Positions 12,159 to 44,000 of a DNA stretch of 64,000 nucleotides are shown here, piece by piece. The DNA comes from Paragordius varius (lineage: Eukaryota; Animalia; Nematomorpha): positions 13,144,001 through 13,208,000 of the forward strand of contig OZ176054.1 in assembly GCA_964247055.1 (NCBI GenBank), written 5' to 3'. A program made the position numbers and the translations under genes. Position 1 is the stretch's first letter. The number at the start of each line of letters is the position of its first letter. The notes under the pieces were generated by a model. The model was not told the DNA's origin, made no database searches, and worked only from the letters and a program-made list of their open reading frames with translations.

Positions 12159-13159
12159 TTAAAATTATGAATGAATAAATACAATTACCAACATTGAAAA
12201 TATTTTTTAGCATCTTGGACAAAAACCCTAATATGGTAGTAATAAAAAATGAAGCTCATATAAACAATTATGTCTATAATTTATAGTCAGCGGGAAAAAA
12301 CTAAAATTATTTAGTAATAGCCATATACATTTTTTTATATTAGAATTAATCTAAAAATTGTATGTAGTCAAGTTTTCATCCCAAAATAATACCTAAATAA
12401 AATATATATGCGCGAATATAATATTATTTGCTTTCTCAACAAACATCGAATTAGTTCACCGAGCAAAATCAGCAATCAATAATTTTAATTAAGACATAGT
12501 AGAAAAAGCGGTAGGCCTAGTAAAAAGACATGGAACACCTGAAAGGTTTAATGCGCTGTCTATATCAGAGCAAAAAATAACGAAAATCTTTTCATAAGCT
12601 TTCAGAGGTTTTAAACAGAAAGTTGTGGTCCTGGCTTGATCCAGAGGTGTATTTAAACAAACGGATATCTCTCATCAATTATTTTAACTGTTATTAAATA
12701 TAAAAAATTTTATAATTTTGGGTCTTAGAGTCATATAACACAGGTAATCATAAAATTCAATTAAAATCTTGAGAATATAGCATTCTTGTTATAAGAATAT
12801 CAAGGTATATTAACACTTTTTTACTTGGGATGGTATTGTATTATAGCTTAGATAAATATTGATTTCAGATCCCATTGAGTTGAAAATCCAGTTCCAGCCT
12901 TGCTTTCTCGGGAACCACTCAGGATACATTTTTCCTAAGAAATAATCGGGTTTCGGTTCTAGTGGTTCTCGTATGACTTTTTTTAAAAATAAAATTTATT
13001 TATATTAGTTTTTAATATTGATTGTATAATTTTATTTTTTCTAGATTTCCATAAAAATCAAATAACCATGATAATTTTAGAATATTTTCTTATGGTAATC
13101 GGTTGAAATGGAATTACCATGTCGTCAATTTTTTTAATGTCTTACACTTAACACCTTAA

Positions 13160-18805: not shown

Positions 18806-18840
<35 letters not shown>

Positions 18841-21800: not shown

Positions 21801-24800
21801 AACATCAACCGGAGGGGGATTTTCATTTTTTGGGGGCGGGAATATTCCAGGGCAAGCATCTGCCCCATCTGCACCCACAGGTGGAGGCAGTACATTCAAT
21901 TTCTTTGGATCATCATCAGCTGTTATCACTACGACTTCAACTCAGGCCGCGCCAAGCTTTGGCGCGTTTGGATTTGGAGCTGCTACCGGTATATTTTGTC
22001 TAGATTATAGATTCTAGAATATTCTATTTTTTTCGTTTCTACAGTTATTTAAATGTGTTTTGATTAGAGTTCCATAAGGAAAAGTGTGCGTAATAGATTA
22101 AAAATTTATTTTCTTTTTACTTTATGTTTGTCGTTTATAAATTTATGTTACACACATGTCTATATCCAAACATATTTTCAAAACAGCTGGCAGTGGGGGC
22201 GCTTTTGGATTTCCCGCCAAAACAACTTCTTCTGCAGCTGCTCCAACTGGATTTTCTTTCTTTGGCGCTCCTTCTCAAACATCAGCTGTTGTCAACACAA
22301 CAACACCTTCCCTGTTCGGTTTTGGCGGCGGGCCATCATCTGTGTTTGGCGCGCCACAAACACAGCTAGGAACTGCGCCCTCTTTTGGGGCAGCCACTAC
22401 ATCAGCTGGTGGGCAATTTTCTTTGTTTCAAATGCCGTCCGCTGCTCCATCAGCTGTTTCAGCCCCAAATCTATTTGGTGGTGGAGGAGGATTTCCGTCT
22501 GCACCCGGATTCAACATGGCGGCGCCCATAAGTAGTACTCCTGCGCCATCTTTGTTTGGCTTTGGTACAAATCAAACGCCTGCATTTGGGTAAGTTTTTA
22601 CAGATACACCTATATAAAATTTAAATGATACGGACAAAACATAAAAATATAAGACAAATGTTTTTTTAATTCTAAAAAGCGGAGGAAAATACATTTATTC
22701 AGGGTCAATAATATTTTTCTTTAGTCTGTAAAGTTTTTATCCTTAAATCTGGCAAATATGAATATAATTTTTACAATTTTATATCATTTACATTTCAAAT
22801 CCATTCACCCCTTAAACAGAATGAATGGAATTTCGTTTAAAATTAATATAATAAAGAAAAATATGATAAACTGCGCCACAAAGGAATATAGATCACAATA
22901 ATAATAATAATAATGGGTTAAATTAGCCCCAAAATTGATGAAATTTATTTTTAGGGGGTTTAAAATGTTTACGATTAAATGGTTTTAAATGTTAAGAGTG
23001 AATTTGAAAATAATGCTAAGGTATATTTGATCAAAATTATGTTTTAGAGGGAATTTAAAATATTTTACAGGGAATTTAAACTGTTTTAGAGTGAATTTGA
23101 AATATTTCAAGTGGTAACTTAAAAAAATATAATATTTTTTAAACCAAATTCTTCTATATTGATAGTTCTTTTGGGGGAACTGGAAATACGAATAATCCTT
23201 TTAATTTTGGAAATTCGTCGATTCAACCAACCGGTTTTGGCGGTTCTTCTTTATTCGGTCAATCATTGGCGACCCAACAAGCATCAGCGCCATCATCTGG
23301 TTTATTTGGTAATCTTTTTTTTATTTTGATTTAAAATTGCATTTTTAACAAATAAAACTTTTAAAGTAATAACTCTTTAAAAATCAGTTATTTTATGTTA
23401 ATTTTTTAGAGATTATTATTTGGTTTTAATCTTAAATGGCTTAAAAAGTTGAGAAATTATACAGTAAAAACTGAAATAATACGGATAAAACTTAAAAATA
23501 TTATGACTAATAATTTTTAAGACAACTATATTTTTAAATCTTGATTTATTTAAATAAAACTCATTATTTATAAATGGCATAATTTTAATTGTAACTAAGT
23601 TGCTTATATGGGGAACATTTAGATTTTAAAAGTATGGTTGTCTTTTAGATAAAAATATTTGTCTTTATATTTTAACGTTTTGTCCTTATGTTGAATTTTA
23701 ATTTTTACTGTAAAATGCCAAAATTGTTTAAAAAGTACAAATATTGACAGTTTTTTACTTTTAAAGAAACCATATTTAAATATTTTATTAAATATAGTGA
23801 AATTCAAATTATACTATGGGCTAAACGTAAAAATATAAAGACATATATTTTTTTAAAATACAACCAACACAATACTTTTTATACCTTAATTTACCCCTAT
23901 AAAAATATTTAAATACAATTGTAAAATATATAATTTGTTGTGTTACCAAATTTATATTATCCATTTGGATTTGAAACACCTTAAGTAAATTAAAAAAATT
24001 TTTAAATGGTTGTTTAGTATTGTCTTTATATTTTCAGTTTTCTCCGTATAATTTGAATTTTTACGGTAATAACAAACGCATATAAAAAATCCTTTTAAAA
24101 ATAACTCTATTTAAAATATTTTTAAATATATATAATATTTTGAGAATATTATTTTTCATTCTATTCATATATGTAATAATTTAACTTTAGTTCAATCCCA
24201 ACCAACTCAAACACCGCAAATAACCCAATCAAATTATACAGGGTATAGTATATATATATACATATTAATTTTTTTTCATATATATCTGGTTTTTTTTTCG
24301 ATTTAAAATGTATGATTACTTATATTTTTACTTACACTTTGTAGATCCTTGATACCATCAAGCTTAAGCGCTCAAACATTTCAAAATGGTAATTAATTTT
24401 TTTATTTTTTAATTGTTAATTTTTTTTAATTTTTTGTTGAAAATTTTTTATATTTTTTTTAGTAAAATATGAAAAGAAATGAAATAATACGGACAAATTA
24501 TAAAAATATAAAGACACAAATACTATTTTTTTCTAAAACCATACTTTTGTTTCAAACCTTAATTTTTTTCCTACATAAATTATTAAAGTTACATTTTTAA
24601 ATGATATAACTGAGTGTAGGTATTATCAATTTACTTCATCTTTAATTCCTATTTTGTAATTTAAAACGATAAGTAATATTGTGTAAATATTAAGGCTTAA
24701 AAAGTATGGCGTTATCTTTATATTTTTACGTTTTGTCCATAAAATAGTGTGAATTTTATTTTATCGATTAAAAATTTAAAAATAAATTTAATTTAAAAGA

Positions 24801-27800
24801 GTCTACTTAAAGTCTTTGAGAGCTAATACAATAAAATAGTGAAATATAATTTTTTTTATTTTATATACAGTAAAAATTGAAATTATACGAAAGGACAAAA
24901 TGTAAAAATATAAAAACAAATACTATTTTTTCTAAAAGACAACCAACCATACTTATTAAATTTTGTGATTTTTTTTAAATATTTCCTATTTTTCAAATGG
25001 CAAAGTGAGAAATAGAGATATATATTACTAACACAATCAATCTTAAATATTATATCGTAATTGTAATAAAAATTGGAATTATACGGACAAAATGTAAAAT
25101 TATAAAGATAAATATTTTTTTCTAAGAGAAAACCATACTTTTTTAAACCTTAATTTTCAAAATATAACTCATTGTTTCAAATTGCACAATATAAAATAGA
25201 AATGTAAATTGGTAGCACAATCAATTACTTAGTTTACGATTGTAATTAAATATTTTAAATAGCAAAAATCAAGGTTTGAAAAAGCATGGGGTTGTCTTTT
25301 GAAAAAAAATGTTTGTCTTTATATTTTAAGTTTTGTCCTTCCGTATAATTTCTGTTTTTACTGTAAATTGCTTATTTAAGAAAAGGTAAGTCTTGAAAAA
25401 ATATGGGTTTGTTTTTTGAAAAAAAATATTTCTCTTTATATTTTAAAATTTCGTCTGTATAAATATTAATTTTTACTCTAAACTTATATAAAGAATTAAG
25501 GATTTGAAAATAGGATATATAAAAAAAATTTCCTCTCTTATTATATGAAATTTTATTGGTAAATTTTGTTTCTGGTTTTTACTTTAGTTTTCTCAGATCC
25601 GACTGGTCCTTTAAGAAAACAAATTTTGGATTTGGTTAATCTTATGCCATACGGCGATGTTCCCCTCGGGAATAGCTCATTATTTTTACAAGTTGAATAT
25701 TTATGATATTTTTTTGAAAATTTCTTTATAAAAGCAATAATTAAAAAGTAATTTGTTGTTTAAAATCTAATTTATCTAATGCTCGAATAATATAATACGA
25801 ATAATTATTATATACTAAAAATTAATTTAACGGTAAAAGACAAATGTTTTTTATTCTAAGAGATAACTATTATCATTTTTTAATACACATATTGTTATAT
25901 TTAGTTATGGAAAATAAATTTATGATTTTAAAATTATTATACCATTAAACTTCAAATTCACCCTCAAATAACTCAAATTCACCCAAAATAAAGTTTTTTT
26001 AAGATTAAAAATATAATAATTTGTTTAAAGCTAAAATAATACTGAAAAAATAATAAACTAAGCTATATAAACATAAATTTATACTAATAATGAGTTATAT
26101 TAGTTGCCCGAAAACATAATTTATTTTTAGGGTGAATTTGAATTGTTCAAGGGTGAATTTGAATTGTTCAAGGTGAATTTGAATTCAAGGGTGAATTTGA
26201 AGTGTTCAAGGGTGAATTTAAATTGCCTAAGGGTGAATTCGATTTGTTTAAGGGTGATATTGAATTGTTTAAGGGTGAATTTAAATTGTTTAGGGTGAAT
26301 TTGAATTGTCTAAGGGTGAATTGAATTGTTCAAGAGTGAATTTGAATTGTTCAAGAGTGAATTTGAATTGTTCAAGGGTGAATTTATATTGTCTAAGGGT
26401 GAATTCGATTTGTTTGAGGGTGAATTTGAATTGTTTAATTCGATTTGTTTGAGAGTGAATTTGAATTGTTTAAGGGGGAATTGTGGTTCAAGGGTGAATT
26501 TGAATTGTTAAAGGGTGAATTGTAAAGGGTGAATTTGAATTGTTCAAGGGTGAATTTATATTGTCTAAGGGTGAATTCGATTTGTTTGAGGGTGAATTTG
26601 AATTGTTTAATTCGATTTGTTTGAGGGTCAATTAGAATTGTTTAAGGGGGAATTGAATTGTTCAAGGGTGAATTTGAATTGTTAAAGGTTAAATTGTTCA
26701 AGGGTGAATTTGAATTGTTCAAGGGTGAATTTGAATTGTTTAAGGGGGAATTTAATTGTTCAAGGGTGAATTTGAATTGTTTAAGGGTGAATTGAATTGT
26801 TCAAGGGTGAATTTGAATTGTTTAAGGGTGAATTTGAATTATTCGAAGGTGAATTTAAATTGTTTAAGGTGAATTTAAATTGTTTAAGGGTATATATCGT
26901 TTTTCATGTTAAAAAATTCATTTTTTTGCTTCGTATGATATTATTAATTCCTCTTTTATTATTGGAATTTAAACTTAATTCCCATCGTAATTTTTAAATG
27001 TATTTAGGATTCTGGACGTGTGCAAAAATCAAGCCCCTCACATTTACCTTCCTTGTTTGATAATAATGTAGTTGATAATCAAAAAACTTCAAATACTTCA
27101 AGTTTAAAGGGTGATTCTATTGATGGTATATTTAATATTTTTATTTTTTGTGACAATTTTAAGTTTGAAATTTTTTTTTATTAGCAATTAAAGACAATAT
27201 ATAGTACAAATAAATTTTAGTATAATTTTTATTTTTCATTCAATTACCATAATTTTTGAGTAAAATATATGGTTATAATTCTAGTTTCCAAACTACTATT
27301 TTAAAATATTTTCATATTACAATTAAACATTTTAAAATTAAATATCACATATTTTTAAAGTTTATTTAATACTACATTTTTTTTAAAAAAAACTTCAAAA
27401 AATATTTAACATTTAATTTTAATAGGTCGTAAAAGCTCTGTACTCTTTTCTGGGTTAATTCCAACCCAGCTTGGAGCAATGCGTTATACACCCAACAATA
27501 AATTTTCATTGCCTACATTTGGATTTGAATCTTCTCCAAAGCGGAATTCTCCGTTTTTAAGCACTAGTCCGTTAAGATCAAACTCTTTTAGATTGGTAAG
27601 TTTTAATTTAGTTTTATCAAGTTTTTTTTATAAAATTATAAGGAATATTATTTGTGTTTTTTTGCAAATAAAAGTCTTTCAAAATGGTTTTTCGTTTTTA
27701 GGAAAAACCTTTAGTTTAAATAATTAATTTGGAAAAATTCGTATGTTATAAAAAAATACAATTTTTAATTTCTTGTAAAAATATGAACAGTGAAATGGAA

Positions 27801-30800
27801 ATTATAAGGATAACACATACATGAATCTACCATGATTTTAATGTGATATTTTTCAAAAAAATCTATTTTTAACAAGTCAAAAAAAGGTTAACTTAAAAAA
27901 ATAAATTTTTTGCTTTTAAATATTTCAATATTATTTTCATTGAAATCTTTTATTATAAACAATAAAAATTAACATTTATTTTTAATATTACCACCCACAT
28001 CCAATAATACTAAATTTCAAAAATATCAAAAATAATATTTTATAGAATTGTAAAATAAGGGTTAATAATACGTTTTTTATAGGTTTTTATCATTAGCTTT
28101 TTAACTTTCATATTTGATTTGTAGAAAGAATTGTTTAAAGAAACACCCCCTAGCCCATCAAAGGAAAATGGAAAAATTAGGAATTTTGACTTGAATGATC
28201 AATCCATTGCAATTATACCTCGAAATAAAAGCGCAAATAGTAAAACTTTACAATTATCTTTTTACTTAAATAAGTTTGTTCATATTTTTTTATATTTATC
28301 CTTTTAACCATGAATTTATAATTAAAATTAAAAGTATGAGGTTTTCTAATAGAGAGCCATAAAAAAATTAATAACTCAAGTTTTACAAAATCAACCAAAT
28401 TTTTAGGGAATATAATTATTCTATGATTAGATATGGAGTTTATAGGCTCAGTTTCTTATTTTATTTTTTAACACTATTCATTTAAACTATGTAAAAAAAT
28501 AGCTAAAAATTTCTTATAAAATAGATAAATTTAAACCTTTGGGTATAGTTTAACTTAGATAATAACTTTTTTTAGGCAACATTTATCTTTTTTTCTATAA
28601 ATTAAAGCATTATTTTATATTAGAATCAAGCTTGAACGCTTCCTTATTATTTCCATCAACTCCATTCAACCTTTTTGGATCTGGTCAAAAAAATGCCAGT
28701 TTTATCCCTCAACATTCAAATCTAAATAATGTTGAACAAAACTCGAATGGTAGGAATTTGAAAAAATTAAACGTAAAAGCTGGCGCATATATTAGTCCAA
28801 AGACAATTGGAAATTTTGCATTTTCACAAAGATCATTGAATTTCAATGGATTAACAACAATGGATTTCAAAACCTCACCTTCAAAAAGGATTTTTAATAT
28901 TGAAGATAATCCTAGTCATTTAAGTCTGTCTACCCCGGGTGTTAGGTATTATTGATATTAATTTAATCAAAATAACTTTTTGTTAGGTCACTTTAACGCA
29001 CGAATTTATTTAATATTTTGAAATTTTTGGGTATAAAAGATAGATATAGATCAAAGCGTGTCCAACACGCGCCTCGAAAATATTTCAGCAGCCCTAGAAA
29101 AATCAAAAAATACTCTCTAGCGATAATTGTTATCATAGATTTTTTACAGTCCTGTCCTATGTTTGAATTTAATATAATATCTATACATGTCCATATACTT
29201 TTTAAATATGAGGGGCGCCTGTCGGTTTTTTAAGTGAAAAATGCCGCCCACGAATTCATTTGTGTTGGACAGCCCCTTGTTTATGCGCATTAGGTTACCA
29301 ATAGAAAATTTTTCAAAAATAGTCGACATATATATGCAATCAAATTTTTCATATAAAACCCATATATATATAAATGGGAGGAATTGACAATGTAATAATA
29401 TCACCATCGTTTATATGAGATTAAATTTTTTGTAAAAAGTTAGGAAACACAAAATCTTACATCTTTTTATATATATATATATATTAGTCGTTATCAATCA
29501 CTATATCCGAAATTAACGGTTCCCGACTCAGTCTTTTCAGTAGATTCGACTGATTCAAATGCGCTCTTTTCATCTTTTCATCAAGAGCAAAGTTTAGAAA
29601 ATATTGATAATCGGGATTTGTCTTTTATATCAACACGCGACAATTTATCTGGACCTTCTGGTATATTTTTATTATTATATATGAAGAATATTTTTACTTT
29701 ACTGTGTAAATATTGGAGTTTTTTCAAATTTTCATAGCAAATTCCTTATTAATCAGTTCTTCACCCATTGTCTTATTAACCATATATCATTACGATAATA
29801 TGTTTTTTTTTCAAATGAGAATAATATATTTTCTTAACAATTCTTTTGATTATGTTGGTTTTGAATAAATATGATTCATATTTAATTTACAAGCTTTTTT
29901 CGTTACCTTTATATTTTAATGGAGAAGAGCGTTTACCATATATAATATGCATGAAACGCTAATTAAAGTTAAAATATATTTTGCTCCTTATCGAATATGT
30001 TTCCATCTCTGATTTAATTATATCTGTTTAAAATTTTTGTTTCTCAAAATAGAAATGTAAATTGATAATCGTTTTTTGTCTAAATGATTTCCATAAACAT
30101 TTTTAGAACATGATGGTCCCTCCTTTGAACAACATCAAAAAAACCAATTTGCGCAAATCAACTCTAATACAATTGAATTATTTCATCCATCTATGGTTGA
30201 GGATTATTACCAATCAAATAACTTTTACAGTGAAGATGAAGGCGAATTCCAATTAATCAGTAGTGATTCTGAAAATGAAAGTCCTAAAAAACGAAGTGGC
30301 AAAACACAAAAAACGGCGACTCCTGGAAAATTGCAAAATTTTAGTGGCTCTAATAGTTCCCTGCAAAATAGGAACCATCAAGAATCATCGTTGAATGTGA
30401 ACAGCTTGCTTAAGAAATTAGCCTTTGAACGGCCCTTGTTTAAATGTACTAAACCTGGGTATGTATAACTAATTTTTTAAATACTTTATATACCAAATTT
30501 AAGGTCTAAAGTGTTAGTTAATGATAAATAATTGGGAAATATGGAGGTGCCCATTTGAAAGAATTACAAAATTAATTTTTCCATTATTTTCTGAATATTT
30601 TTTTAATATAAACATTTATAATTATGAATTAAAGTTTAAAATGCTAAGTAAAAAATAAAGATGATTTAATAAAAAAAATAAAATCTATTTCTTTCAACCA
30701 AAAAAACTATAAACTTTACGCGTGTTGATTTTTAACATAACGTATACCATATAATTAATGTTAATAAAATTGAGATATTGAGATTTCAACGTTTAAAATT

Positions 30801-32793
30801 TAAGATTTTCTCAAACAATTAATTACTTTTATTTTTTTGTCTAAATAATTTTAATTTTTATATACTAGAAACATATCTATGATAATCTTTTTTTTTCATA
30901 GATATACCACGGCCCCAAGCGTAGAGGAATGTTATGAAATGTATTTGAACAATTTGCGTAAAACTATTATAGATTTTTATGACAACGATCCTGATATGGT
31001 GGATAAAGCTAGGAGTCGTCTAATGATTAACAATTTTACGATTGAAAGAAAGGTTTTTATTTAACCTTTTTTTCGATAAAAAAATTCAAAAATATTAAAC
31101 GTATTTGAAGTATTATTTGATTTACCGGTTAATTTTTATAAAGATCACTTTAAAATATTGAAATTTATGTTGGTTAAGTGATATAAGTATGAAATTTTAA
31201 ATAGTTGTATGTAATTTGTGTTAATGTAAAAGGAGTGTTTCAGTTTTATTATTTATATTTTTTGGTTCAACATTTGGATTTTTAAATAACATCTCCTTTG
31301 GTTTTATATAAATTGGTATATTTTAATCTGTAAAAAACCCAACACAAGCCTTTAAATTCCTATACAAATTATAATTTGTTGAAAATTAGCATTAAAATAT
31401 TCTTTTAAATGAATAAAACAATATAAAACTTTAAAGTATTGCATATATTTAATTTTTTTTATATTAAAAAAGAATATATATGTATATATTTTATTTTGTA
31501 GGGTTATGGATCTATCATGTTTCCTGGAGAAATTAATGTTATAGGCCTCAACATTGATAGAAATGGTAAAAAGATTTATTTATGCTCTCAATTATAAAAT
31601 TACCATACCATATTTTTGAAAATTTTAACGGGGAAAAATTTAATTTTTTTGAATAACGAAACTAAAACAATTTTAGTTTAAAAATTTTCTCAATTTTCAA
31701 TTTTTATAGCCATATATATATATATATATATTTTAATATTAAAATCTCACCAGGCATATAAAATATACTTCAATAGACACCATATTGAAATAAAATAAAT
31801 ATTTTTCCTTTTATTAGTCCTGATTGATGTTAAGGATGTCGAAATTTATCCGGATGAAGTGGAAAAACCCATATTGGGTGAGGAAATGAACCGACCAGCT
31901 CTTATAACACTTCACAATACTTATCCCATTGATAAATCAACTTTGCAACCAATTAAGGTACTAATTTATTAAATTAAAAGTAGAAATTACAGTAAAAACT
32001 GAAATTATACGGACAAAACCTCAAAAAAGATAAATATTTTTTTTCTAGAATCTTGATTTGTTCCAATATAACTCATTGTTTTAAACTGCAAAATACGAAA
32101 TTGATATGTTTATTGGTAAAACAATTAATTTATTTACAATCGTAGGAAAAATTAAGGTTTAAAAAAATGATGGTTGTCTTTTGTGTAAAAATTGTCTTTA
32201 TATTTTTTCGTATAATTTCAGTTTTTACTGTATACCTATGTCAGGGTGCATAAAGTTAGAAAATACCCAAATAGTTAATAAAAGATAAAAATAGCTTAGT
32301 CAAATTAATAACTAGGTTTGTAATTATGGGGTTAACCTCCTATCATAATTATATTTACATTAATGATTTTCTATTAAATAGATAAAAAACCTTTTAATTT
32401 TAATGTTAACGGATTTTTGTTTTTAAAATAAAGTTTATTTTATATACCACCATAATGGTAATAAATATTTTATTAATATAGGAATTGGATAAGATAATTG
32501 ATTTCAATTATGAGAAACGTTTACGCATCGCTTGTAAGAAAATGGGAGTTAAGTTTATCGATTATATTCCACACACTGGGACATGGATGTTTGAGGTAAT
32601 TTTAGTTTCAGATCAATTAAAAAAACTTTTTGATAAATTATTTGAGATGAGTTTTTATTTATTAAAATTCAATTTTTTTTACATATTTTCTATTTTAAAC
32701 CTCTTATTTATTTCATTTTGAAAAAGTTCGTAATTTATCACTTTTTAAATATATAATATGATCCTTAAATTATTTTAGGTCTCCCATTTTTAA
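15987..32793 (+). CDS. NUP98: Nucleoporin Nup98 (FG domain, GLEBS, autoprotease domain), about 1286 aa, 29 exons, ending VSHF-stop; not fused to Nup96
   Basis: Exons: 15987-16077, 16479-16619, 17015-17185, 17578-17705, 18342-18435, 18840-18943, 19176-19211, 19401-19436, 19543-19593, 19985-20105, 20571-20699, 21164-21211, 21749-21988, 22187-22589, 23166-23308, 24191-24242, 24345-24388, 25597-25691, 27008-27125, 27426-27595, 28125-28239, 28624-28945, 29488-29660, 30107-30458, 30902-31052, 31502-31565, 31818-31957, 32482-32595, 32779-32793. All GT-AG and phase-consistent (3861 nt). GLEBS: GTTIKFKAPT...QCISAMKEYENKSLEELRLEDYMANRK. APD: KPGYTTAPS...FTIERKGYGSIMF...NRPALITL...YEKRL...GTWMFEVSHF. 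A few linker-exon boundaries are less certain. Confidence 0.95.
20814..21081. mobile_element. TA-flanked Tc1/mariner-type MITE family (cagtaaaaactgaaattatacggacaaaacg...), copy in a Nup98 intron
   Basis: Inverted termini cagtaaaa...ttatacggacaaaacg and ttttgtccgtata...ttttactg. Confidence 0.7.
21449..21659. mobile_element. Palindromic MITE with ~75-bp inverted arms
   Basis: ggcttatt...ccacactatatatagttgtgg...ctagtgtatggaaaaaacaaca is mirrored by tgttgtttttccatacactag...ccacaactatatatatagtgtgg...aataagcc. Confidence 0.75.
23462..23710. mobile_element. TA-flanked MITE copy
   Basis: TA|cagtaaaaactgaaataatacgg ... atttttactg|TA. A second, more degenerate copy follows at ~23795-24065. Confidence 0.8.
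24470..25490. mobile_element. Cluster of about 4 nested or partial TA-flanked MITE copies (Nup98 intron 17)
   Basis: Repeated atacggacaaa / ttttgtcc arms at ~24487, 24735, 24868, 25080, 25340 and 25455. Confidence 0.7.
25938..26894. mobile_element. Foldback-like MITE, copy B, with the right arm expanded to about 36 copies of the 21-mer
   Basis: Left end tataccatta with about 2 repeats; same core as copy A but inverted; agggtgaatttgaattgttca array at 26128-26890 ending gggtata. Confidence 0.8.
29052..29279. mobile_element. hAT/Charlie-like MITE; related termini at ~10385-10420 and ~16255-16290
   Basis: caaagcgtgtccaacac ... gtgttggacagccccttg. The shared gcttcgcgggccgca subterminal motif is seen in the other fragments. 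No TSD found. Confidence 0.5.
31990..32230. mobile_element. TA-flanked MITE copy
   Basis: TA|cagtaaaaactgaaattatacgg ... cgtataatttcagtttttactg|TA. Confidence 0.85.
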
Positions 32794-33566
32794 ACTCAAA
32801 TATCTGGAAAAAATGACTCAAAAAAATCAAACTCAAAGCCTACATAAGAAACAGCCTTCTCTATTATATTAATGTTATGATAAATATCATCCATTTTATA
32901 AAACAAATAAATGTTTAAATTCGCGTAGATACTAATGTGTTGTTGGTTGATATTTATTGAAATCTTTTCATAAATATTTTTTTGTTTTCTTTTTTTTATT
33001 TTCTATATAAATATGGTTTGTCATGTTTAAGCCGATATTCATAATAAATATATATATATTATAACTAATAAATTATATATAATGACTTTAAAACACAATA
33101 ATAAAATAATAGTTATGTGATGTGGGGGTGTAGGGGTAAGATACATAAAAATAACTAATTTATATATACAGGAAACCTCTTCATTTTTTATAAAAACATA
33201 TAAATTTTATCATTTTTTGGGAATTATTTTAGAAAAACCCAAATAATTAAAACTTAGATATCAAAAAAATAGTTTATTCTGTTGAAAATACAAGTGTGCT
33301 TAAATTATCTTTTAAAATTCAAATTTTTGACTAATTTTTTTCACAAAAAAAGGTTTGACTGTTATACATATTGAAAAGTGTGACTGCGTCGTGGTTTTAC
33401 ATTTAAATACTAATATAAAAAAAGGATATATTAATATAAGGGGCGAAAATTAAAGAGAATTTTTCTTTACATTAAGTTAAAAGTAATAGAAAATGTGACA
33501 TCTTTTATATGTTTTTAAAACTTGGACAATAAAAAGGGTAATTTTTTCCCCCACGTTTAGTTTGGT

Positions 33567-35206
33567 TTAAGACATGAATTGCATGATTGCTCGCAGTGCA
33601 TAAAGATTGGCTGCTTGGATTTTGGCATCCATAATCATGAGATTAACATGAACCTAAATACAATTAGATTAAACAAAAAATAATAAAAGTTTTTTCACTA
33701 AATTTTCAAAAATCGCTTTTAATACAGCAAAAAATTAAAATTTTACGGGTAAAACGTAAAACTATAAAGAAAAATGTTTTGTTCCCAACCATACCTTTTT
33801 AAAACCTTCTTTATTTTTCTTATATAAACTAAACTATTCAATTATAATTGTAAAAAATAATTTATGTGTTATTGATATAGATAGATCTCTCCATACTTTG
33901 GATTAAACAATGAGTTTTAAGATTTAAAAAATATGTAAGGTTGTATTAAACAAAAAAATATTTACCTTTATATCAATAAAACTCATTTAATCTAGTTGAA
34001 AGTTAATTATAGTCATAAAAAATCGTAAAACCTACAACATGAATTAATATATTATTATATTCTTTAGGAAACTCACAAAATTACTCCCTAAAACTATATG
34101 TATGTTTTTTAATTTAACAAAAAATAAAATATGTACCTTTTCAGATTCTAGGAAATCGCGCATAAATCCTTCCTTAATGCAAAACTCTAAGGAACTCGAA
34201 GTACTGCTACTCCTTTTACTTAAAGGGGAACTTTTTGTCCCTTCATTTCCGCCGCCATTGTTAGAGTTTTTACCCCGTTTTTTCGTATTGGTAGAATGAG
34301 TTTGACCAGATTTTTTATTCTAAGAATATATATGTAAAAAGATTAAAAATTAAATATTAGTTTAAACATAAAAGTTTAAATATAATGAATTTTTTCCATA
34401 AAGATACCCAACTATATTTCTTATTTCACAAACTAATAACGATATGTTACCTATACAGAAAAAAAATAATTTATCCAAATAAAAATTATTTGCCTTGGAC
34501 TTTTTATCTCATTACTGTTTAATATATAGTTTTGAAAGCGAAAAAAAAGTATTTTTTTCAGATAAACGAAATTTAAAAATCTTCAATTATATTTAAACTA
34601 AAATTGTTAAATATAAAATAAGGTATGCTAACATAATTTACATATCTATTCCACATTTTGAATGGATTATACGCATAAAAAAATATATTTTTTTATTATT
34701 TATATAAATATGGGAAAAATTATCTTTTTATGCTTTATTTAAAAACTTTTTTCAAAAAATTTACTTTATTCATTTTGCCATGAGGTGGATTCGTAGAAGA
34801 ATTTTCAATTTTCGTTGCAAAAGATTGGCGGTTGTTCTTATTGAGAGATGTTTCAGGAACCGATTCAATTCTAAATGATAATTATTAATATTTTATGATA
34901 AAAAATTAATATAAATTATCAATTAAACTGGATTAAATTATATATATATATATATATTCACTCCTGATACGGATGTATAAGAAACATAGGGTATTTTTTC
35001 CAAAAAAAGATATTCAAACTTTTTTAAATCTTTTCCTGTATAATATATTAATTGTGTTACTACTTTATATTTTTTATTTTATGCTTTGCAATGTAAATAT
35101 TAATTTTATAAAAAATCAAGTGTTTTAAAAAGTATTTCGGTTGTTTGAAAAATAAACTCTCCATATTTTTACATTTTGTCCTAGTATAATTTCAGTATTT
35201 ACTCTA

Positions 35207-35248
<42 letters not shown>

Positions 35249-38200
35249 AACTATTGAGAAAAACTAATCTGATTATGTTAAATATATTCAGTTTAAACTT
35301 TTTGCATTTTTATTAAAATAAAAAACTGTTAAAATAGTTTTTATGTATAATTTCATCAATCTTTACTCTACTATATACTTCGGTAAAAATTGATACATAC
35401 CAAACTATTGAGAAAAACTAATCTGATTATGTTAAATATATTCAATTTAAAACTTTTTTAAAATAAATATTCTTTTTTTACTTTTTCTAAGTAAAATTTC
35501 AGTTTTTACTGGATATATTTTTGTAAAATTGATATATATAAACTATGGCCAAAAACTAATCAGATTATGTTAAATATATATTCAATTTAAAACTTTTTGC
35601 ATTTTTATAAACATAAAAAGACTTTGTAAAATAATTTCTATCACCTGAATAATTTGGGCGATTTTTTTCCCTTATTTTCCATTTTATCATAATTTTCATT
35701 TTTATTGTCTTTGTTGTGAATTACAATGTTGTAACAAGCGTCACAAAAGGTCGGAGCTAAAATGCGTTGTGGATAACACGTTAAAGTTTTGATGACCTAG
35801 AAATATTAACATTTCCCATTAATTTATGATTTATTGAATTTTACGTAAAAATTAAAATTATAATAAAACTAAATTAAAATCACTTATATCCACACAAATT
35901 TTTGGCGATATAAATTTTTATTGTTTTTTTTTTCGTAACAAATGTTAGAAAGCTTTTTTTTATTTTTACAAGTTATTTATGAGAAACCCTTGTTATATAA
36001 AAAAAATCAATGAAAAACCATAAATTTATATAATATTTATATGATTTACAAAAAAACGTAAATTTTTTTTATAATATTAAATTCTAACGCATATCCATTT
36101 ATAAAATCACTAATATAAGTTAATTAATAAAAGGAAGTGTAAAGTTTAAGCAGTGCTAAATTATATTGCACAGTTATACTTATTATCAAAAAAATTTATT
36201 TCTTTTGTAATATGGAAATATTTTTAATAATACTTGTTAAAGATTCATTAAATAGCAAATATAAATTTTACTCATGTTTTCATGGGTTATTCCAAAAAAG
36301 TGTCGTGTTAACTTCACATAAAAATAATTTAACAGATGGTAAAAATAAATAATAAATAATTTATAAAACCATTTTCAAATTTCTAGTCAACAGCTGATTG
36401 ACTTGACTGTAATCGTAATCGTCATGGCGGATCCCATATGCCGAATGAATGTAATTCCAAATGGCCCGACGAAACATGGACGTATCTACGTTACTTACAC
36501 AACCCATTCTGGAATATAAAATATTATAAGAATAAAAATTTAGTTTTAAATTATTTTTTTTGGATATCACAATAAAAGAATAATTTGAAATAAATTTTCT
36601 ATAATATATATTGAAATTAATTTCAATTTCAAAAATGTTTAAAATTTCACGGGACTTAAAAAATAAACATAAAAACAATTTTTTCAAATTTAAATAAAAT
36701 GACAAACTTCCGATTGGTACAAATATATAAAAAACTTTTTTTATGCAAAAATAATCTCAAAGTATTTTTCATTATTAAGTTTTATATTTATCAAAAATCA
36801 AAAGATTTAAAAAGTATGGTTGGTTGAAATATTATTTGTCTTTATATTTGCACATTTTGTCCGTAATTCGCTTTTTACTGTATTAAATTTTTAAGTGAAA
36901 ATAAAAATAATATGCAATTTAAGTGAATTTTTTGACTTTATTTTTAATCATTCAACATATCAATAAAGTTTTTATAGAAATAAATCTATATTTGCACAAA
37001 AAATTAAAAAAAAACATATGTTAATATTTAGTTTATAATTAATAAAATTCATAGTACGTGGAATAAGTAAGGTGATATGCCATACGGAATTTGTCATCTA
37101 ACAGATTGCTTAGCTCAGGACACAATCTATTAACCAGTGCATACCCATGGTGTTCCCAAGAATAATCCTATATAATATATTTTTAAACAACAAAAATAAA
37201 AAAAGAAATTTTAAATAAAATTAATTAATTAATTAAATCAAGTAAAAAGGATGGTAAATAAGAGGTTTATAAAATATATGATTAAGGTATATTAAACAAT
37301 CCTTATTACAGTAAATTTGAAATTATATGGACAAAACGTAAAAATGTTACGATAAAAATTTTTTTGAAAAGATTTTCATACTTTTTTTATAACAAAATCA
37401 TTTGATAACAATCGTAAAATATGTAATTAATTGTGCCAATATACATTGTTATTTTATACTTTGGAGTTTAAGACAATGAGTTATATTTTAAAAAACCAAG
37501 TTTTTGTCGTTATTTTTTTACATTTTGTCCGTATAATTTCATTTTTTACTGATAGGCATTTATATAAATATAAAATATATCAAAAAAATTGGAATTTACA
37601 AAAAAACGCACTGTTTTTTTCAGATCTCATCTCTATATAGAAAAAAAACTTGGTTTTTTACTCAAGGGTAATTTTATCAAATTATTACATTTTACTCTAT
37701 TTTATACATCATTTTACTTTAAAAAAAACCAAAATTTATCTAATACAATATTGTAAATAAATTCTCAAACAAATTATAATTTAGAAGAAATATAAACTTG
37801 AATTCTAAAGGTAGGGGCTTGACTAGGATGGTCTCGCTTAGCAAAATCAACGTAAGAAAAAGTTTCATCAGCGGAAATAAAAGTTGAAGCTTTAACTAAA
37901 TCCAACACTTCCGTGAGATTAGAACCGTCTCGTTTAAGCTTATTCCTCCAATCTTCAGTTTTGTTTTCATCTCTGACCATGGTTAAAATTTGATATTATA
38001 TACCATTTACACAAATTCAAATTCACTCTTAAACAATTCAAAATGACCCTTAAGCGATTCTAATTCACCCTTAAACAATTCATATTCACCCTTAAACAAT
38101 TCATATTCACCCTTAAACAATTTAAATTCACCCTTAAACAATTCAAAAAAAAATTCAAATTGAACCCTAAAAATAAATTATGTGTTTTCGGGCAGCTAAT

Positions 38201-40539
38201 ATAACCCATCATCATTAATATGAAATATATTTTTAAGAACATATATTATTCGGCATTATATTAATTTTAAACAGAATTTCGTATTTTAAAAATATTAAAA
38301 AATAATGGTAGATTATAATCGTAAAAAACATATAATTTATTTTAGAGTGAATTTAAATTGTTTGAGGGTGAATTTGAATTGTTCAAGGGTGAATTTGAAT
38401 TGTCCGAGGGTGAATTTGAATTGGAAATGATAAAGCAAAGGATGAAAGGACATACGTCAAAATATAAAGACAATAATTTTTCTCAAAAGACAACTACATT
38501 TTTTAAACTTGATTGTTTTTTAAAAATAACTAAATGTTTTGAACTGCAAAGTAAGAAATAGTTGTGTAAAAGGGTAATATAATCAATTATCTATTTTATA
38601 TAATTTGTGGCGGAAAAACTAAGTTTCCTAGCAGTATGAGGTTATTTTTTTAAAAAAAATTATATGTCTTTATGTTTTTAAGTTTTGTCCGTAAAATTTT
38701 AGTAGGCAATCAAAATGTAAAAATAAAAGTATGGTAAAAATAAATATTAAATATATATCACTATTGGTTTCCCCCAAAACTATAAAAATTAAGGATAAAA
38801 AAATATTTTTTAACAAAATTCATATTATAAGCAACATGGTATACTTTTGACAAAAAAATATTTTATTCATTTTATATACCATTTACAATTCAAATTCACC
38901 CCCTGAACAATTCAATTTTACCCTTAAACAATTCAAATTCACCCTCAAATAAATAACATGTTTTTTAAGATTAAAAAATACCAATATTTTTATATATTTT
39001 TAAAAAATAAAAATTTTGTTTTAAAATCATACTGAAAAAATAATAAACTATAACATAAACATATATTTCATATTTATAATGAGTTATATTAGCTGTCCGA
39101 AAACATATAATATATTTTTAGGGTGAATATGAATTGTTCAAGGGTCAATTTGAACAGTAAATGGTATATATTTATTCTAGGAAATATTAGTAAATTAATT
39201 TTCATCTATATTCCAATATTCGTAAACTAAAACGATTGTTTGTGCCTTTAACTTTTACTTGAGTGTTTAAAATATATTTTTAACTTGTTTAAACAACTTT
39301 TAGCAAATATGCTTTTACTTGAAATTATTCGTTCGACGCAAGTTAGTTTCATCGAATTGAAGTAAGAGGGATGATGGACAACTACTGTTTGTCGTCGTGT
39401 TGTCTTCATCAGAAGTAATTCCACTTTGAGGTGAACTCAACAAGACATTGAAATTGGGGTTTTTAATCACATTCTTTCAAATTTAATAATAAAAATTATA
39501 ATTTTAAAGATAAAAATTGAATTAAAATTAAATCAAAGATTAATCCATAAAAATGTAAAAAAATAAAAGACAATTTTTTTTCTAAAAAAACAACCCCATA
39601 CATGGTTAAAGAAACCTTAATTTATCCTATAAAAAACATTTAATTATAATCAAATACATTAATGAATGTGTTATCAATTTCCATTTCTATATAAAACAAT
39701 GAGAGTTATATTTAAAAATATTAAGATTAAAAGTCTATTGGAAAAAATATATGTCTTTATATTTTAACATTTGTCCGTATAATTTCAATTTTTACCGTAA
39801 AATTAATGTATCAAAATTACTGAAAGAGACAAATATTTTTTGGTATATAAAGATAGCCCCATACTTTTTTGAACACACCTTGATTTTTATTAAGTATGTA
39901 ACCTATTGATTATTTTGGATTGCAAGCATAGGGAGAAACATAAATAGGGTTACAAAATTATATTAGTTTATGTGGGAAATATCAAGGTATAAAAAAGTAT
40001 GGCTATCTATAAATTGTCTATTGTTAGGGTAATATATAAGGACAAACCCTTAAAACTAAAAGAAAAATATAATAAAAAAGACATTTTTTTTATAAATAAA
40101 AAGACCCCAAAATTATTTTATAAAAACATTGATATTTTATATATATTTTACATGTTAACAATTTGGAATTTCATAGGTGTCTTTACTAATTTATGTATCT
40201 ATTTTCCTCAATTTATCGCCCCAAAATAATAGGTTATATTACTTGTAAAATTAATCAAGGTTATAATATAAAATCGTCTTCATATATGTTATATAGGATA
40301 ATTTTATTTCAATTAACATACTGCAGTTTCTAGCGTGGATTCAAAGGTATAATTTTTTAATGTAGTTTGTGGAGGTTCAGGTTTAATGGTCATAGCCAGG
40401 GCGATATCTATTGCTTTTTGAGATGAGGGTGTTGCTATATATATGTAGGAAAAAATTATTGAACATTTTTTAGAAATATTGTGACTCAAACTAATGTTTT
40501 AACACATCATCCAGTTAAAGTTTTTTAATCAAAAGTTTG

Positions 40540-40576
<37 letters not shown>

Positions 40577-41039
40577 AAAAAATTATTAAACATTTTTATA
40601 AATTGTAAAATAAAAATCTAATGTTTTAACAATATAAACATTTTTATAAATTGTAGAATAAAAATCTAATGTTTTAACACATCATCTAAAGTTTTTTAAT
40701 CAATCGCTTTTTTTATTTATATATATTAAAGGAAAAAATTATCAAACATTTTTATAAATTGTAGAATAAAAATCTAATGTTTTAACACATCATCAAGTTT
40801 TTTAATCAATCGCTTTTTTTATTTATATATATATAGGAAAAAATTTATTAAACATTTATAAATTGTAGAATAAAAATCTAATGTTTTAACACATCATCCA
40901 GTTAAAGTTTGTTAATCAAAAGTTCGTTTATATATATATATATATATATATAATTATTAAACATTTTTATAAATTGTAGAATTAAATTGATGTTTTAACA
41001 CATCATCCAGTTAAATTTTTAATCAAAAGTTCGCTTTTT

Positions 41040-41083
<44 letters not shown>

Positions 41084-44000
41084 AAAAAATTTATGAAACA
41101 TTTTTAGAAATATTGTGACTTAAACTAATGTTTTAACACATCATCCAGTTAAAGTTTTTTAATCAAAAGTTCACTTTTATATATATATATATATATAGAA
41201 AAAAATTATTTTTATATATCGTGACTTAAACTAATGTTTTAACATCACCCAGTCAAAGTTTTTTAATCAAAAGTTTGCTTTTTTAAGAAAAAATCTTTTT
41301 TTTACCCATAAAACTTATAATTACAGGTGATCAAATATGGGTAATAAAGTGTGAATAAGGCATCAATTAACCTCAAATTAAAAACTTTAAATCTAAATTT
41401 ATTAAGAGTTGACTTCTTTTTATACTTAAACATATATTTTACCTAAAAAATAGTCCTTTGGAAAAAACTTAAATATTTTAATATTCTACCTTACCATAAC
41501 TTACCTCACATATTTTAAGGCTTTAAAATTCAAATTTTACAAACAAAAGAGAATATATAAAGCCAGCCAATTACACTTAATATTGAAAAATTTTACAGTA
41601 TATATGCCTTTCAATGGTTACTTATTTCATAACACTATAGTAGGGGGCAATTTGCAACAAAAGATTATATCGAAAAAAAGGAAATGAAAAAATTGTTAAT
41701 TCGAAATTTTATTGTTTTTTCCATACATTCCTGTGTTGAAATCGCTCTCTACTATAGTGTTGTGAACTAAGCACCATTAAAATAAATGCATACTGTAAAT
41801 TTTTACTGTAAAATTGAATAAAATAATTATAATAGCAGGTCAATTCACAATAGTATATCGAAAAAACGGAAAGAAAAAATTGTTTATTCAATATTTTTTA
41901 GTTTTTTTTTTTTTCATACTAAAAATTGCCCAATTATATATAGTTTGAAATAAGCAACCATTAAAATAAATGCAGGCATATTGTAAAATTTTACTGTAAA
42001 ATTAAAAAAAATTGTTTAATCAACGTTTTGTTGTTTTATCATACATTCCTGTGTGGAAATTTCTCAAAATAAGCAACCATTAAAATAAATGCATACTATA
42101 AATTTTTACTGTAAAATTGAAAAAAAAACTTAATCATGATAGTAGGGGGCAATTTGCAACACAATAGTATATCGAAAAAAAGAATTTTTTTCATTATTTT
42201 GTTGTTTTTTTCATACACTTATGTGTTGAAATTGCCTAACTAAGAAACCATTTAAAATGAATGCATACTGTAAATTATTTTTACTGTAAAATTGAAAAAT
42301 CTCAATAGTGTATCGAAAAAAAAGATATGAAAAAATAGTCTATTCAATATTTGGTCGTTTTTTCCATAAACAATACTGTTGTGTTTCAAATTGCCCCCTA
42401 CTAACGTGTTGAAATTGCTCAAAATAAGAAACCATTAATGAATACATACTGGAAATTTTACTTTAAAACTGAAAAAAAAACTTTATTCTTTACCCGGAGA
42501 TATGGTATTAACATCTTGTGCCATTTCAATGTTGGTGTTTCCAGGAAACATTTCATAATTCTCATTATTGTTATCTAAATCCTGAGCTCGAATCTTTTGA
42601 TGTAAAACTTTCATTTTAGTTATCAGGGCGTCGACAGTCACCTCTTCAAAAGCTTCCAACTATGTTTTAGTATGCAGAAGAGTAAAATTTAGACGGGTTA
42701 TATTATTAGGGTTTAAGAACATTTTAAACATAAAATACAGTCATGTTGTCGTTTATTTTTTTATTAGGCAAATCCCTTAACCTATAAACAACCCTAGATA
42801 AAAACACTTGATGAAAACCTCAGAATTTGGAATTAACAGTCCTATTTTATAACATCCAAGGGGGTTTGTAAAAGACTTTGGTCATGATTTTTAATCAAGA
42901 TGCTATAATTAAACAAATTTTTATGTACAATCCATAGATGTGTTAAATAATGACATATCTATTTAAGTTTCAACAATCTATAACTAATCGATAAGCATAA
43001 TTTATATATTGGCAATATATACTCATCTTTCTGGCTTAAACTGCTGTGAATAATGTTAAAATAAAATAGTTTTTATATTGTTTAATGTAAAACACTCATA
43101 TTAATTAAGGATAACCTTTAACGTCAAACAAAGTAAAAACTATTCCCCCTATTAAAATCAAAGATTTTCAAAAAGTCTCAAAAAAATTTCTCTATCTGTA
43201 AAATTTTACGCAATCTTCGCCCTCGTCTACTGTGTTAAGTTGTAAATCATCATTTGCGGATGGTTCTATCAGAGAATTCTCGTTTTCGGTTGTTGAAACA
43301 AGCAAAACCTTTCTATTCAGCAGGGGTGTACTCGAGTTAGGGTTAATATTACTTGTTTGCAATGGATATGAGAGGGGTGTATCCGTTAACAAAGAGTTTT
43401 TATTGCTTTGTTCTATATCATCATACAAGTAAAAACAGTAAAAAAAGTTTAAAGTTGAATAACTTAAAATAAATTTACATTTTTATTTTACATTTGACAT
43501 AATTCACATATAAAATATATAATTTTAATGATTTATAGTTTTAATTAATAGGAAAATTATACAATGACGATATTTCTAAAGAGTTAGGCGTGAATTAAAT
43601 ATATATATGTGCGTTTGAAAAAATATTTTATAATATAATTAGGTATATACTGTAATTTTTTATAATTTCAAGTACAAGGTTTAGAAACCCTAAGTTTCAT
43701 ATTTCACATGGAGACACTTAAAATTCAGATATATAATATATGGTTGATACCTTAACTCACCCCCTTTAAACCAGTAAAAACACTCTATAAGCCCTTTAAA
43801 AACTTAACATTTAAACCCAATTTCAAATCAAAAAACCAATTTTTATATTAGGTAACCACCGTCCTTGTTAAAACTGTTAATCTTATAATTTTCAAGTCAA
43901 ATTTCTTAAATTAGAGCTTTAAAACCTAAAAAAGTACGCCCTAAAATTTCCTATTTTAAACGTAACAAATTCATTTAAACCTCAAAATTTTCCAACCCAA

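What the first reader, a model, noticed from the sequence alone, without database searches (positions are those of the whole stretch)
32794..33566. No room for Nup96: apparent fission of the Nup98-Nup96 polyprotein gene
Only 773 bp of AT-rich DNA, with AATAAA at ~32906, separate the Nup98 stop from the stop of the convergent sestrin. I saw no + strand Nup96-like exons within the sestrin introns. Animals normally make Nup96 only through the fused precursor, whereas separate genes are known in plants. This predicts a free-standing Nup96 gene elsewhere, perhaps with its own APD, or loss of Nup96. The two 3' UTRs may also overlap.
Basis: partly seen in the sequence, partly recalled or inferred. 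Interest (0 to 1): 0.72.

Follow-up and report, generated by a model that had tools for sequence, protein, structure and literature searches.

The report
Nup98 gene split from Nup96
In this AT-rich animal genome the nuclear-pore gene that normally encodes Nup98 and Nup96 as one self-cutting precursor is split: Nup98 stops exactly at the old cutting site, and a Nup96-like gene with a short self-cleavage leader lies on another contig, as in plants.

Summary
The + strand Nup98 gene (15987-32793) ends in a 15-nt terminal exon, VSHF plus TAA. Exactly 773 nt of 22% GC DNA separate this stop from the stop of a convergent sestrin gene. This genome's own Nup96-like exons find nothing similar from 20 kb upstream to 134 kb downstream of the window start.

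The same Nup98-end/sestrin-end junction occurs in three diverged copies on this contig, which argues against misassembly. The closest relative found, the horsehair worm Gordionus, has a Nup98 with the same intron and a VSHF-stop exon (stop TGA), so the truncation is old.

A junction profile found the predicted free-standing partner at G000:C2:12189594-12189289 (-). It reads FKVPHF|SRYRL followed by an acidic run, with a roughly 100-residue degenerate autoproteolytic leader. No FG, GLEBS or N-terminal autoproteolytic-domain similarity lies in the 22 kb upstream. Its body is only weakly, though collinearly, Nup96-like.

The scan had already noted this Nup96 half on other DNA (s1-277357) and the HF-stop here (s1-285151).

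No RNA data were available. The split is known in plants. The held papers gave no animal report, but the spider mite genome also shows a Nup98-only gene.

The parts
15987..32793 (+). Complete Nup98 gene: start codon, FG-repeat exons, GLEBS, linker and autoproteolytic-type domain (APD), ending at HF-stop.
   Evidence: tblastn of Gordionus Nup98 (P0002) hits collinearly from residues 1-27 at 15987-16070 to residues 996-1034 at 32482-32598. FG-rich open frames lie at 16.4-23.3 kb.
17610..17705 (+). GLEBS (Gle2/Rae1-binding) exon of Nup98.
   Evidence: Pfam PF21240 at 54.3 bits on window:17577-17717. Genome search places it at C5:13161610-13161705, one of only two GLEBS copies in the genome.
30902..31052 (+). 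APD exon 1 (start of the domain, with a lineage-specific insertion).
   Evidence: AG/GT boundaries read. Duplicated with the other APD exons in the two partial copies. No Pfam hit on its own.
31502..31565 (+). APD exon 2 (GYGSIMFPGEINVIGLNIDRN).
   Evidence: 81% identical to P0002 residues 928-948. Splice sites and phase (a lone G joins TC of the next exon) read.
31818..31957 (+). APD exon 3 (core, with YPDE..KP motif).
   Evidence: Pfam PF04096 at 41.2 bits, profile positions 57-104 of 148. As a phmmer query it found 132 APD proteins.
32482..32598 (+). APD exon 4, ending ...TWMFE, followed by a phase-0 GT donor.
   Evidence: 74% identical to P0002 residues 996-1034. Junction profile A1 scores 43.7 bits. 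Sequence read.
32779..32793 (+). Terminal mini-exon: VSHF then TAA, a stop codon in place of the Ser of the HF|S autoproteolytic site.
   Evidence: Preceded by a polypyrimidine-rich tract and AG. Kept in both partial paralogues, one with a synonymous GTC>GTA change. Kept in Gordionus as GTA TCA CAC TTT TGA after the homologous intron.
32794..33566 (.). The 773-nt AT-rich spacer between the two convergent stop codons, holding both 3' UTRs.
   Evidence: 22% GC and no long open frame. AATAAA on + at 32906, 33043, 33067, 33100 and 33528; AATAAA on - at 33273, 32995 and 32953. Such hexamers are expected by chance in DNA of this composition.
33567..33653 (-). Last sestrin exon with its stop codon (33567-33569).
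   Evidence: Pfam PA26 positions 419-445 of 445, E 2.7e-8.
33567..47519 (-). Convergent sestrin gene.
   Evidence: Collinear PA26 matches on the - strand: profile positions 25-77 (46659-47519), 145-187 (44754-45005), 268-308 (37777-37995), 337-389 (36364-36756) and 419-445 (33570-33653).

Best explanation
This is a real, old gene fission of the Nup98-Nup96 polyprotein gene.

The window holds the genome's only complete Nup98 gene, with FG repeats, GLEBS and an APD. Its last exon encodes VSHF and then a stop. The protein is therefore made directly with the C-terminal Phe that other animals obtain by self-cleavage at HF|S. With no Ser after HF, this APD cannot cleave. It is presumably kept as the fold that docks Nup98 to the pore (inferred).

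Nup96 is encoded separately on contig C2. Its gene starts with a leader of about 100 residues that is a shrunken APD. The leader ends FKVPHF|SRYRL followed by an acidic stretch.

The likeliest history is duplication of the fused gene followed by complementary loss (inferred). One copy lost everything after HF. The other lost the FG/GLEBS part and most of the APD. Whether the leader still self-cleaves to expose the usual N-terminal Ser of Nup96 is not known.

Shown here: the gene structures, the absence of Nup96 near Nup98, conservation of the HF-stop exon, and the HFS junction on C2. Inferred: splicing of the mini-exon, leader cleavage, and the evolutionary path.
For: - The gene model has GT-AG introns and consistent phases and ends VSHF-TAA.
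- Sestrin's last exon and stop lie 773 nt away on the other strand.
- No Nup96-like exon was found in 154 kb.
- In the whole genome, Pfam APD hits occur only in the window gene, its two partial copies on C5 and six fragments on C4. GLEBS occurs only in the window gene and at C5:13456825.
- The Nup98-end/sestrin-end adjacency recurs in three copies that are 85-93% identical.
- Gordionus Nup98 (XP_065313475.1, 1037 aa) ends ...TWIFEVSHF with the same phase-0 intron and a VSHF-TGA terminal exon. It has no Nup96 similarity in the 10 kb downstream.
- Junction profile A1 hit C2:12189319-12189390(-) at E 5.8e-4 genome-wide. hhalign of that open frame against Nup98-96 alignment A2 gave probability 92.5%, E 5e-7.
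- The only two PDB hits of that open frame are Nup98-Nup96 chains aligned at the cleavage site.
- Downstream open frames give weak hhalign hits in collinear order, at A2 columns 176, 322, 567, 595, 678 and 726. An increasing run of 6 out of 8 has p = 0.022.
- No FG, GLEBS or N-terminal APD similarity lies in the 22 kb upstream of the C2 junction exon.
- A 27-nt intron in PHF5A shows that the 23-nt intron needed for the 100-residue leader is plausible in this genome.
- In S. pombe, Nup98 and Nup96 expressed from separate loci support viability (PMC4483485).
Against: - There is no transcript evidence. No RNA run held the locus, and only short DNA unitigs could be laid on it.
- Pfam Nup96 (PF12110) finds nothing in the genome or in the C2 open frames. 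Nup96 parts of lobster and Trichuris proteins find nothing either. The Nup96 identity of the C2 gene body therefore rests on weak collinear matches (combined score p about 0.06) plus the junction.
- If the mini-exon were not spliced, Nup98 would read through from FE into about 40 intron-encoded residues.
- The C2 leader lacks several nearly invariant APD residues, including the Trp before F-x-V-x-HF, so it may not be catalytic.
- I could not find the Gordionus counterpart of the C2 gene.
Confidence: 0.75

Rival explanations
1. The VSHF-stop exon is not used, or is only one alternative 3' end, like the short Nup98-only mRNA of humans and S. pombe. The main product would then differ: either read-through into the intron, or splicing to distant exons.
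For: No RNA evidence for the splice. Humans and fission yeast make Nup98-only transcripts by alternative splicing (PMC4483485). Two partial downstream copies could in principle offer alternative 3' exons.
Against: The 15-nt exon, its AG and the upstream donor are kept in three paralogues and in Gordionus, where the stop codon differs. No Nup96 exons exist on this strand within 134 kb. The Nup96-like gene is on another contig. The read-through tail is AT-rich intron-like sequence and differs between the copies.
Confidence: 0.1
2. Nup96 is lost or unrecognisably replaced. The C2 junction-like open frame would then be a relic pseudogene or part of an unrelated gene.
For: Pfam Nup96 finds nothing in the genome or in the C2 open frames. 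Body matches have individual E values of 0.02-0.4. The protein atlas search was uninformative.
Against: Long open frames (83-269 codons) follow the junction on the same strand. They match A2 alignment columns 322, 567, 595, 678 and 726 in collinear order. By eye (not tested) they carry Nup96-like motifs in that same order: W-x-LC, WL, the A-x-x-x-A...G-x-x-R-L/ALLL-x-Q block, L-x-W and D-x-C-Y-H. A decaying relic in 22-25% GC DNA would not keep such open frames. The junction hit is specific.
Confidence: 0.1
3. Assembly artefact: a misjoin, or duplicated haplotigs, put the sestrin 3' end next to a truncated Nup98.
For: The region lies in tandem segmental duplications that include a 26-kb block at 100% identity, which could be an assembly duplication. 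No single contig of the public runs spans the gap.
Against: The adjacency is present in three copies that differ by 7-15%. Unitigs from two studies cover all or nearly all bins with no break signature apart from an interspersed repeat at about 31985-32230. The stop after HF lies inside the conserved mini-exon and is shared with Gordionus.
Confidence: 0.03

Closest known systems
Separate NUP98 and NUP96 genes of land plants
   Same: Nup98 and Nup96 are on different chromosomes. The stand-alone Nup96 keeps an N-terminal APD leader ending F-x-V-x-HFSRFGL plus acidic residues: plant proteins P0190-P0202 carry PF04096 and PF12110, with HFS at residues 174-205. The separation in plants is stated in PMC8685260.
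   Different: Here the leader is only about 100 residues and too degenerate for Pfam. The host is an animal. Nup98 ends exactly at HF.
Canonical animal/fungal Nup98-Nup96 (Nup145, Nup189, npp-10) precursor
   Same: The same domains in the same order up to HF (FG, GLEBS, APD). The same junction motif as in fused relatives, including nematodes (Trichuris P0089, Pristionchus P0094).
   Different: The defining continuous open frame across HF|S is absent. Cleavage of Nup98 is replaced by a stop codon.
Short Nup98-only isoforms of human and S. pombe
   Same: They produce Nup98 without Nup96 from a transcript that ends soon after the APD (PMC4483485, PMC2150585).
   Different: Those isoforms keep a tail after HF|S that must be removed by autocleavage, and they coexist with the fused mRNA. 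Here there is no tail and no fused option.
Engineered split in S. pombe
   Same: Nup98 and Nup96 expressed from two loci rescue the nup189 deletion (PMC4483485), showing the layout is viable.
   Different: That split is artificial. The one here is natural and conserved between two genera.
Other natural splits seen here
   Same: Agaricomycete stand-alone Nup96 proteins start M-A-R-F at the cleavage site (P0186-P0189, P0196). Basidiobolus Nup98 (P0093) ends at HF. Tetranychus urticae Nup98 (P0057) has no Nup96 within 10 kb downstream.
   Different: The fungal Nup96 proteins have no APD leader. The mite Nup98 keeps an 8-residue tail after HF|S. None of these was studied further here.

Membership tests
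Nup98 (GLFG/FG nucleoporin with GLEBS and S59 autoproteolytic-type domain) | FG-repeat N-terminal region | tested here: met
   Open frames at 16.4-23.3 kb are rich in FG, SLFG, FFGG and GLFG. They align to P0002 residues 271-505.
Nup98 (GLFG/FG nucleoporin with GLEBS and S59 autoproteolytic-type domain) | GLEBS motif (PF21240) | tested here: met
   54.3 bits against a cut-off of 27.
Nup98 (GLFG/FG nucleoporin with GLEBS and S59 autoproteolytic-type domain) | C-terminal Nucleoporin2/S59 domain (PF04096) ending in HF | tested here: met
   One exon alone scores 41.2 bits against a cut-off of 28.4. The exons are collinear with the Gordionus APD. The protein ends VSHF.
Nup98 (GLFG/FG nucleoporin with GLEBS and S59 autoproteolytic-type domain) | Autoproteolysis at HF|S (nucleophilic Ser after Phe) | tested here: not met
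   The codon after Phe is TAA here and TGA in Gordionus, so there is no Ser and no scissile bond.
Fused Nup98-Nup96 precursor gene | Nup96 coding sequence continuous with Nup98 across HF|S in one gene | tested here: not met
   There is a stop after HF. A convergent sestrin lies 773 nt away. No Nup96-like exon was found in 154 kb.
Stand-alone Nup96 with APD leader (plant-type layout), for the C2 gene | HFS junction followed by an acidic stretch | tested here: met
   FKVPHFSRYRLDEDSDDEEE. Profile E 5.8e-4 genome-wide; hhalign probability 92.5%, E 5e-7. The only PDB hits are Nup98-Nup96 at the cleavage site.
Stand-alone Nup96 with APD leader (plant-type layout), for the C2 gene | Nup96 domain (PF12110) | tested here: inconclusive
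No Pfam hit exon by exon. Weak collinear hhalign matches only.
Stand-alone Nup96 with APD leader (plant-type layout), for the C2 gene | No FG/GLEBS part upstream in the same gene | tested here: met
   No tblastn hit of Nup98 proteins and no FG-rich open frame in the 22 kb upstream. No GLEBS on C2.
Stand-alone Nup96 with APD leader (plant-type layout), for the C2 gene | Leader self-cleaves | not testable with these tools
   This needs expression of the leader-Nup96 N-terminus, with His and Ser mutants.
Sestrin (PA26) | PA26 domain through to the C-terminus | tested here: met
   Five collinear exon matches covering profile positions 25-445 of 445.

The most novel reading that the evidence does not exclude
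Nematomorph-like animals and plants have independently reached the same layout: a Nup98 gene without Nup96, plus a stand-alone Nup96 that still carries a self-cleaving leader. If the roughly 100-residue leader here is active, autoproteolysis would be kept not to separate two nucleoporins but to make the Ser-initiated N-terminus of Nup96, or to time its assembly. The genetically encoded HF-COOH end of Nup98 would show that the free C-terminal Phe, not the act of cleavage, is what Nup98 needs.
Probability: 0.3. Interest if true: 0.7.

Novelty: new variant of a known kind. Interest (0 to 1): 0.55.

Why it matters
The Nup98-Nup96 polyprotein with its HF|S self-cleavage is usually described as the rule for animals and fungi (PMC8685260, PMC4483485). 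Why the two proteins are made from one precursor is still debated.

A natural animal lineage in which the gene is cut at exactly the cleavage site gives a ready-made test. Nup98 is born "pre-cleaved", and Nup96 keeps only a miniature leader. This would show which aspects of the pathway are dispensable: stoichiometric co-expression, the cleavage event itself, or a free Phe and Ser terminus.

It also matters for annotation. Orthology pipelines that expect a fused gene will score Nup96 as missing in such genomes, because its body is too diverged for Pfam.

Tried and rejected
Genome searches that found nothing
- Whole-genome search with Pfam Nup96 gave no candidates, and nothing rang in the 14 control genomes either.
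- Nup96 parts of lobster and Trichuris proteins gave no hits.
- A weak APD-like hit on C9 proved to be the wrong frame of a coiled-coil (myosin-like) exon.

Motif patterns
- Three patterns gave only chance-level hits: HF[ST]-x-YG, YPD[DE]..KP and W-x-F...HF[ST].
- The real junction has Tyr in place of Trp, and RYR in place of KYG, which is why these missed it.

Protein searches
- Three word-indexed protein searches did not recover a Gordionus Nup96.
- Pfam, hmmsearch and tblastn on single C2 open frames recognise only the junction.
- The protein atlas search was uninformative.

Reads
- Presumed RNA runs of the species held none of the locus. Read laying gave only short DNA unitigs, so it shows neither splice evidence nor a contig spanning the gap.

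Full report
**What is in the window**

The window is 20-33% GC and comes from a 110-Mb, 44-contig animal assembly, at G000:C5:13144001-13208000.

A complete Nup98 gene lies on the + strand. Gordionus Nup98 (P0002) aligns collinearly from its first 27 residues at 15987-16070, through the GLEBS exon (17568-17705) and FG exons, to the autoproteolytic-type domain (APD). Pfam confirms GLEBS at 54.3 bits and the APD core exon at 41.2 bits.

Reading the splice sites gives these APD exons: 30902-31052, 31502-31565, 31818-31957 and 32482-32598. All have AG/GT boundaries and consistent phases. The last of these ends ...TWMFE. After a 180-nt intron, an AG precedes GTC TCC CAT TTT TAA at 32779-32793. Nup98 therefore ends VSHF, which is the residue before the scissile bond of the conserved F-x-V-x-HF|S-[KR]-Y-G junction. 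That junction is present in nearly all APD proteins that continue past the domain.

**The other side of the gap**

The - strand exon 33570-33653, with its stop at 33567-33569, matches the last 27 positions of Pfam PA26 (sestrin). Four further PA26 pieces follow collinearly up to 47519.

The gap 32794-33566 is 773 nt at 22% GC, with no open frame of note. The nearest - strand AATAAA is at 33273. If those two signals are the ones used, the UTRs do not overlap. In DNA of this composition such hexamers occur by chance, and there are no RNA data, so this stays open.

**Is there a hidden Nup96?**

The Pfam Nup96 search and foreign Nup96 proteins find nothing anywhere in the genome. By itself this shows little, because genes here are searched exon by exon. 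The informative test came after I had found this genome's own Nup96-like gene (described below). Its open frames, and a Nup98-96 profile, find nothing from 20 kb upstream to 134 kb downstream of the window start.

**Is it a misassembly?**

The 3' part of Nup98 together with the sestrin 3' end is present three times:
- the window copy;
- a partial copy at window-equivalent 65.6-73.2 kb;
- a copy at 86.8 kb onward that carries a second sestrin.

These copies are 85-93% identical in this part. All three keep the mini-exon, one with a synonymous change. A chimeric join would not be inherited by diverged paralogues.

Public DNA unitigs from two studies cover all or nearly all bins of 28600-34500, but they are too short to span the gap.

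One caution concerns the same duplicated unit. Part of it (window 39550-65582) is 100% identical over 26 kb to its copy. That is either a very recent event or an assembly duplication. It does not touch the finding's coordinates.

**Is it old?**

A search of 1.8 billion representative proteins with one APD exon found Gordionus sp. Nup98 as the second-ranked hit and the most similar by identity: XP_065313475.1, 1037 aa, from the horsehair worms (Nematomorpha). It ends ...TWIFEVSHF.

In its locus the homologous exon ends ...TTC GAA, followed by GT. After an intron of about 770 nt, the last exon is GTA TCA CAC TTT TGA. The position, phase and content match, but the stop codon differs. No Nup96 similarity lies in the 10 kb downstream, which holds transposon-like frames.

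The HF-stop therefore predates the split of the two lineages. Nematode relatives such as Trichuris and Pristionchus have the fused gene.

**Where is Nup96?**

I looked for it independently. Motif patterns failed.

A profile of 30 junction regions (A1) hit C2:12189319-12189390(-) at E 5.8e-4. The open frame C2:12189594-12189289 reads ...GSQFLVMCLYDFKVPHFSRYRLDEDSDDEEE. Against Nup98-96 alignment A2, hhalign gives probability 92.5% and E 5e-7 at the cleavage site. Its only PDB hits are frog and human Nup98-Nup96, aligned at the same place.

An ATG at C2:12189695, a 23-nt GT..AG intron and this exon together give exactly 100 residues before the Ser. A 27-nt intron in the highly conserved PHF5A gene of this window shows that such tiny introns are used here.

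Downstream on the same strand are open frames of 83-269 codons. Their best hhalign matches to A2 are individually weak (E 0.02-0.4) but fall in the order of the protein. An increasing run of 6 out of 8 has p = 0.022. By eye they carry the W-x-LC, WL, A-x-x-x-A...G-x-x-R-L/ALLL-x-Q, L-x-W and D-x-C-Y-H motifs of Nup96.

Pfam sees none of this. The Nup96 identity of the gene body is therefore probable, not proven.

The 22 kb upstream holds no FG, GLEBS or N-terminal APD similarity. The genome's only other GLEBS is on C5.

**Mechanism**

Shown: two separate genes, one ending at HF and one beginning with a reduced APD plus HFS.

Inferred:
- The fused gene duplicated and the two copies lost complementary parts.
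- Nup98 is made "pre-cleaved". Its APD cannot cut (no Ser follows HF) and serves for docking.
- The Nup96 leader may still self-cleave, as the plant leaders presumably do.

The S. pombe experiments show that separate expression is viable (PMC4483485).

**Comparison and novelty**

Plants have separate genes, and their Nup96 keeps an APD leader (PMC8685260).

Agaricomycete Nup96 proteins start at the cleavage site, and Basidiobolus Nup98 ends at HF.

Among animals, the Tetranychus urticae Nup98 gene stops 8 residues after HF|S and has no Nup96 within 10 kb.

Searches of the held papers found no report of a split in animals and none that mentions Nematomorpha with Nup98. I rate this a new variant of a known kind, of moderate interest. 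The scan had already noted both halves (s1-285151 on this window, s1-277357 on C2).

Noticed in passing
window 39550-64000 (continues to C5:13209582), versus C5:13242039-13268071: A 26,033-bp block is 100.0% identical to a copy 58,489 bp downstream. The rest of the same duplicated unit (window 28.7-39.5 kb) is only 80-93% identical. This is either a very recent duplication or gene conversion, or an assembly duplication.
   Followed up: partly
C5:13209578-13217158 and C5:13230845-13236521 (window-equivalent 65.6-73.2 kb and 86.8-92.5 kb; L001, L003, L009, L010, L013): Two partial copies of the Nup98 3' half, from the linker exons to VSHF-stop, lack the FG/GLEBS part. In copy 3 the exons are 94.9% identical to the window gene with no indels, against 91.3% plus many gaps outside the exons. 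That fits a young pseudogene but does not exclude an APD-only product.
   Followed up: partly
G000:C4:1227308-1349939 (L004-L008): Six copies of a rearranged Nup98 fragment sit in a tandem array of about 24-kb units. Each fragment is the APD core exon joined directly to a linker exon. They are probably pseudogene pieces carried in a large tandem repeat.
   Followed up: no
window 11889-11915 (- strand): PHF5A has a 27-nt GT..AG intron. The frame resumes with [12 protein letters not shown]..., the normal C-terminus, so ultra-short introns are real in this genome.
   Followed up: yes
G000:C5:13456825-13456920: This is a second GLEBS copy (47.8 bits) with no APD nearby in the Pfam search.
   Followed up: no
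L070 (Tetranychus urticae HE587301.1), 10001-12800: The spider-mite Nup98 (865 aa) ends HFSSYELVNE-stop. Even close mite Nup96 queries find nothing in the 10 kb downstream. This animal may also have a split Nup98/Nup96.
   Followed up: partly
window 31985-32230 and many other places: An interspersed repeat of about 250 bp (MITE-like) sits in the intron between APD exons 3 and 4. It is at very high copy number: unitig depth there is hundreds of times that of the flanks, with many loose ends.
   Followed up: no
window 26118-26891: An imperfect tandem repeat inside a Nup98 intron has strong GC skew. It translates as repeated GEFELFK in one frame, and related copies lie at 38.0-38.4 kb and 4.0-4.5 kb. 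It is a satellite or transposon array, not FG repeats.
   Followed up: no
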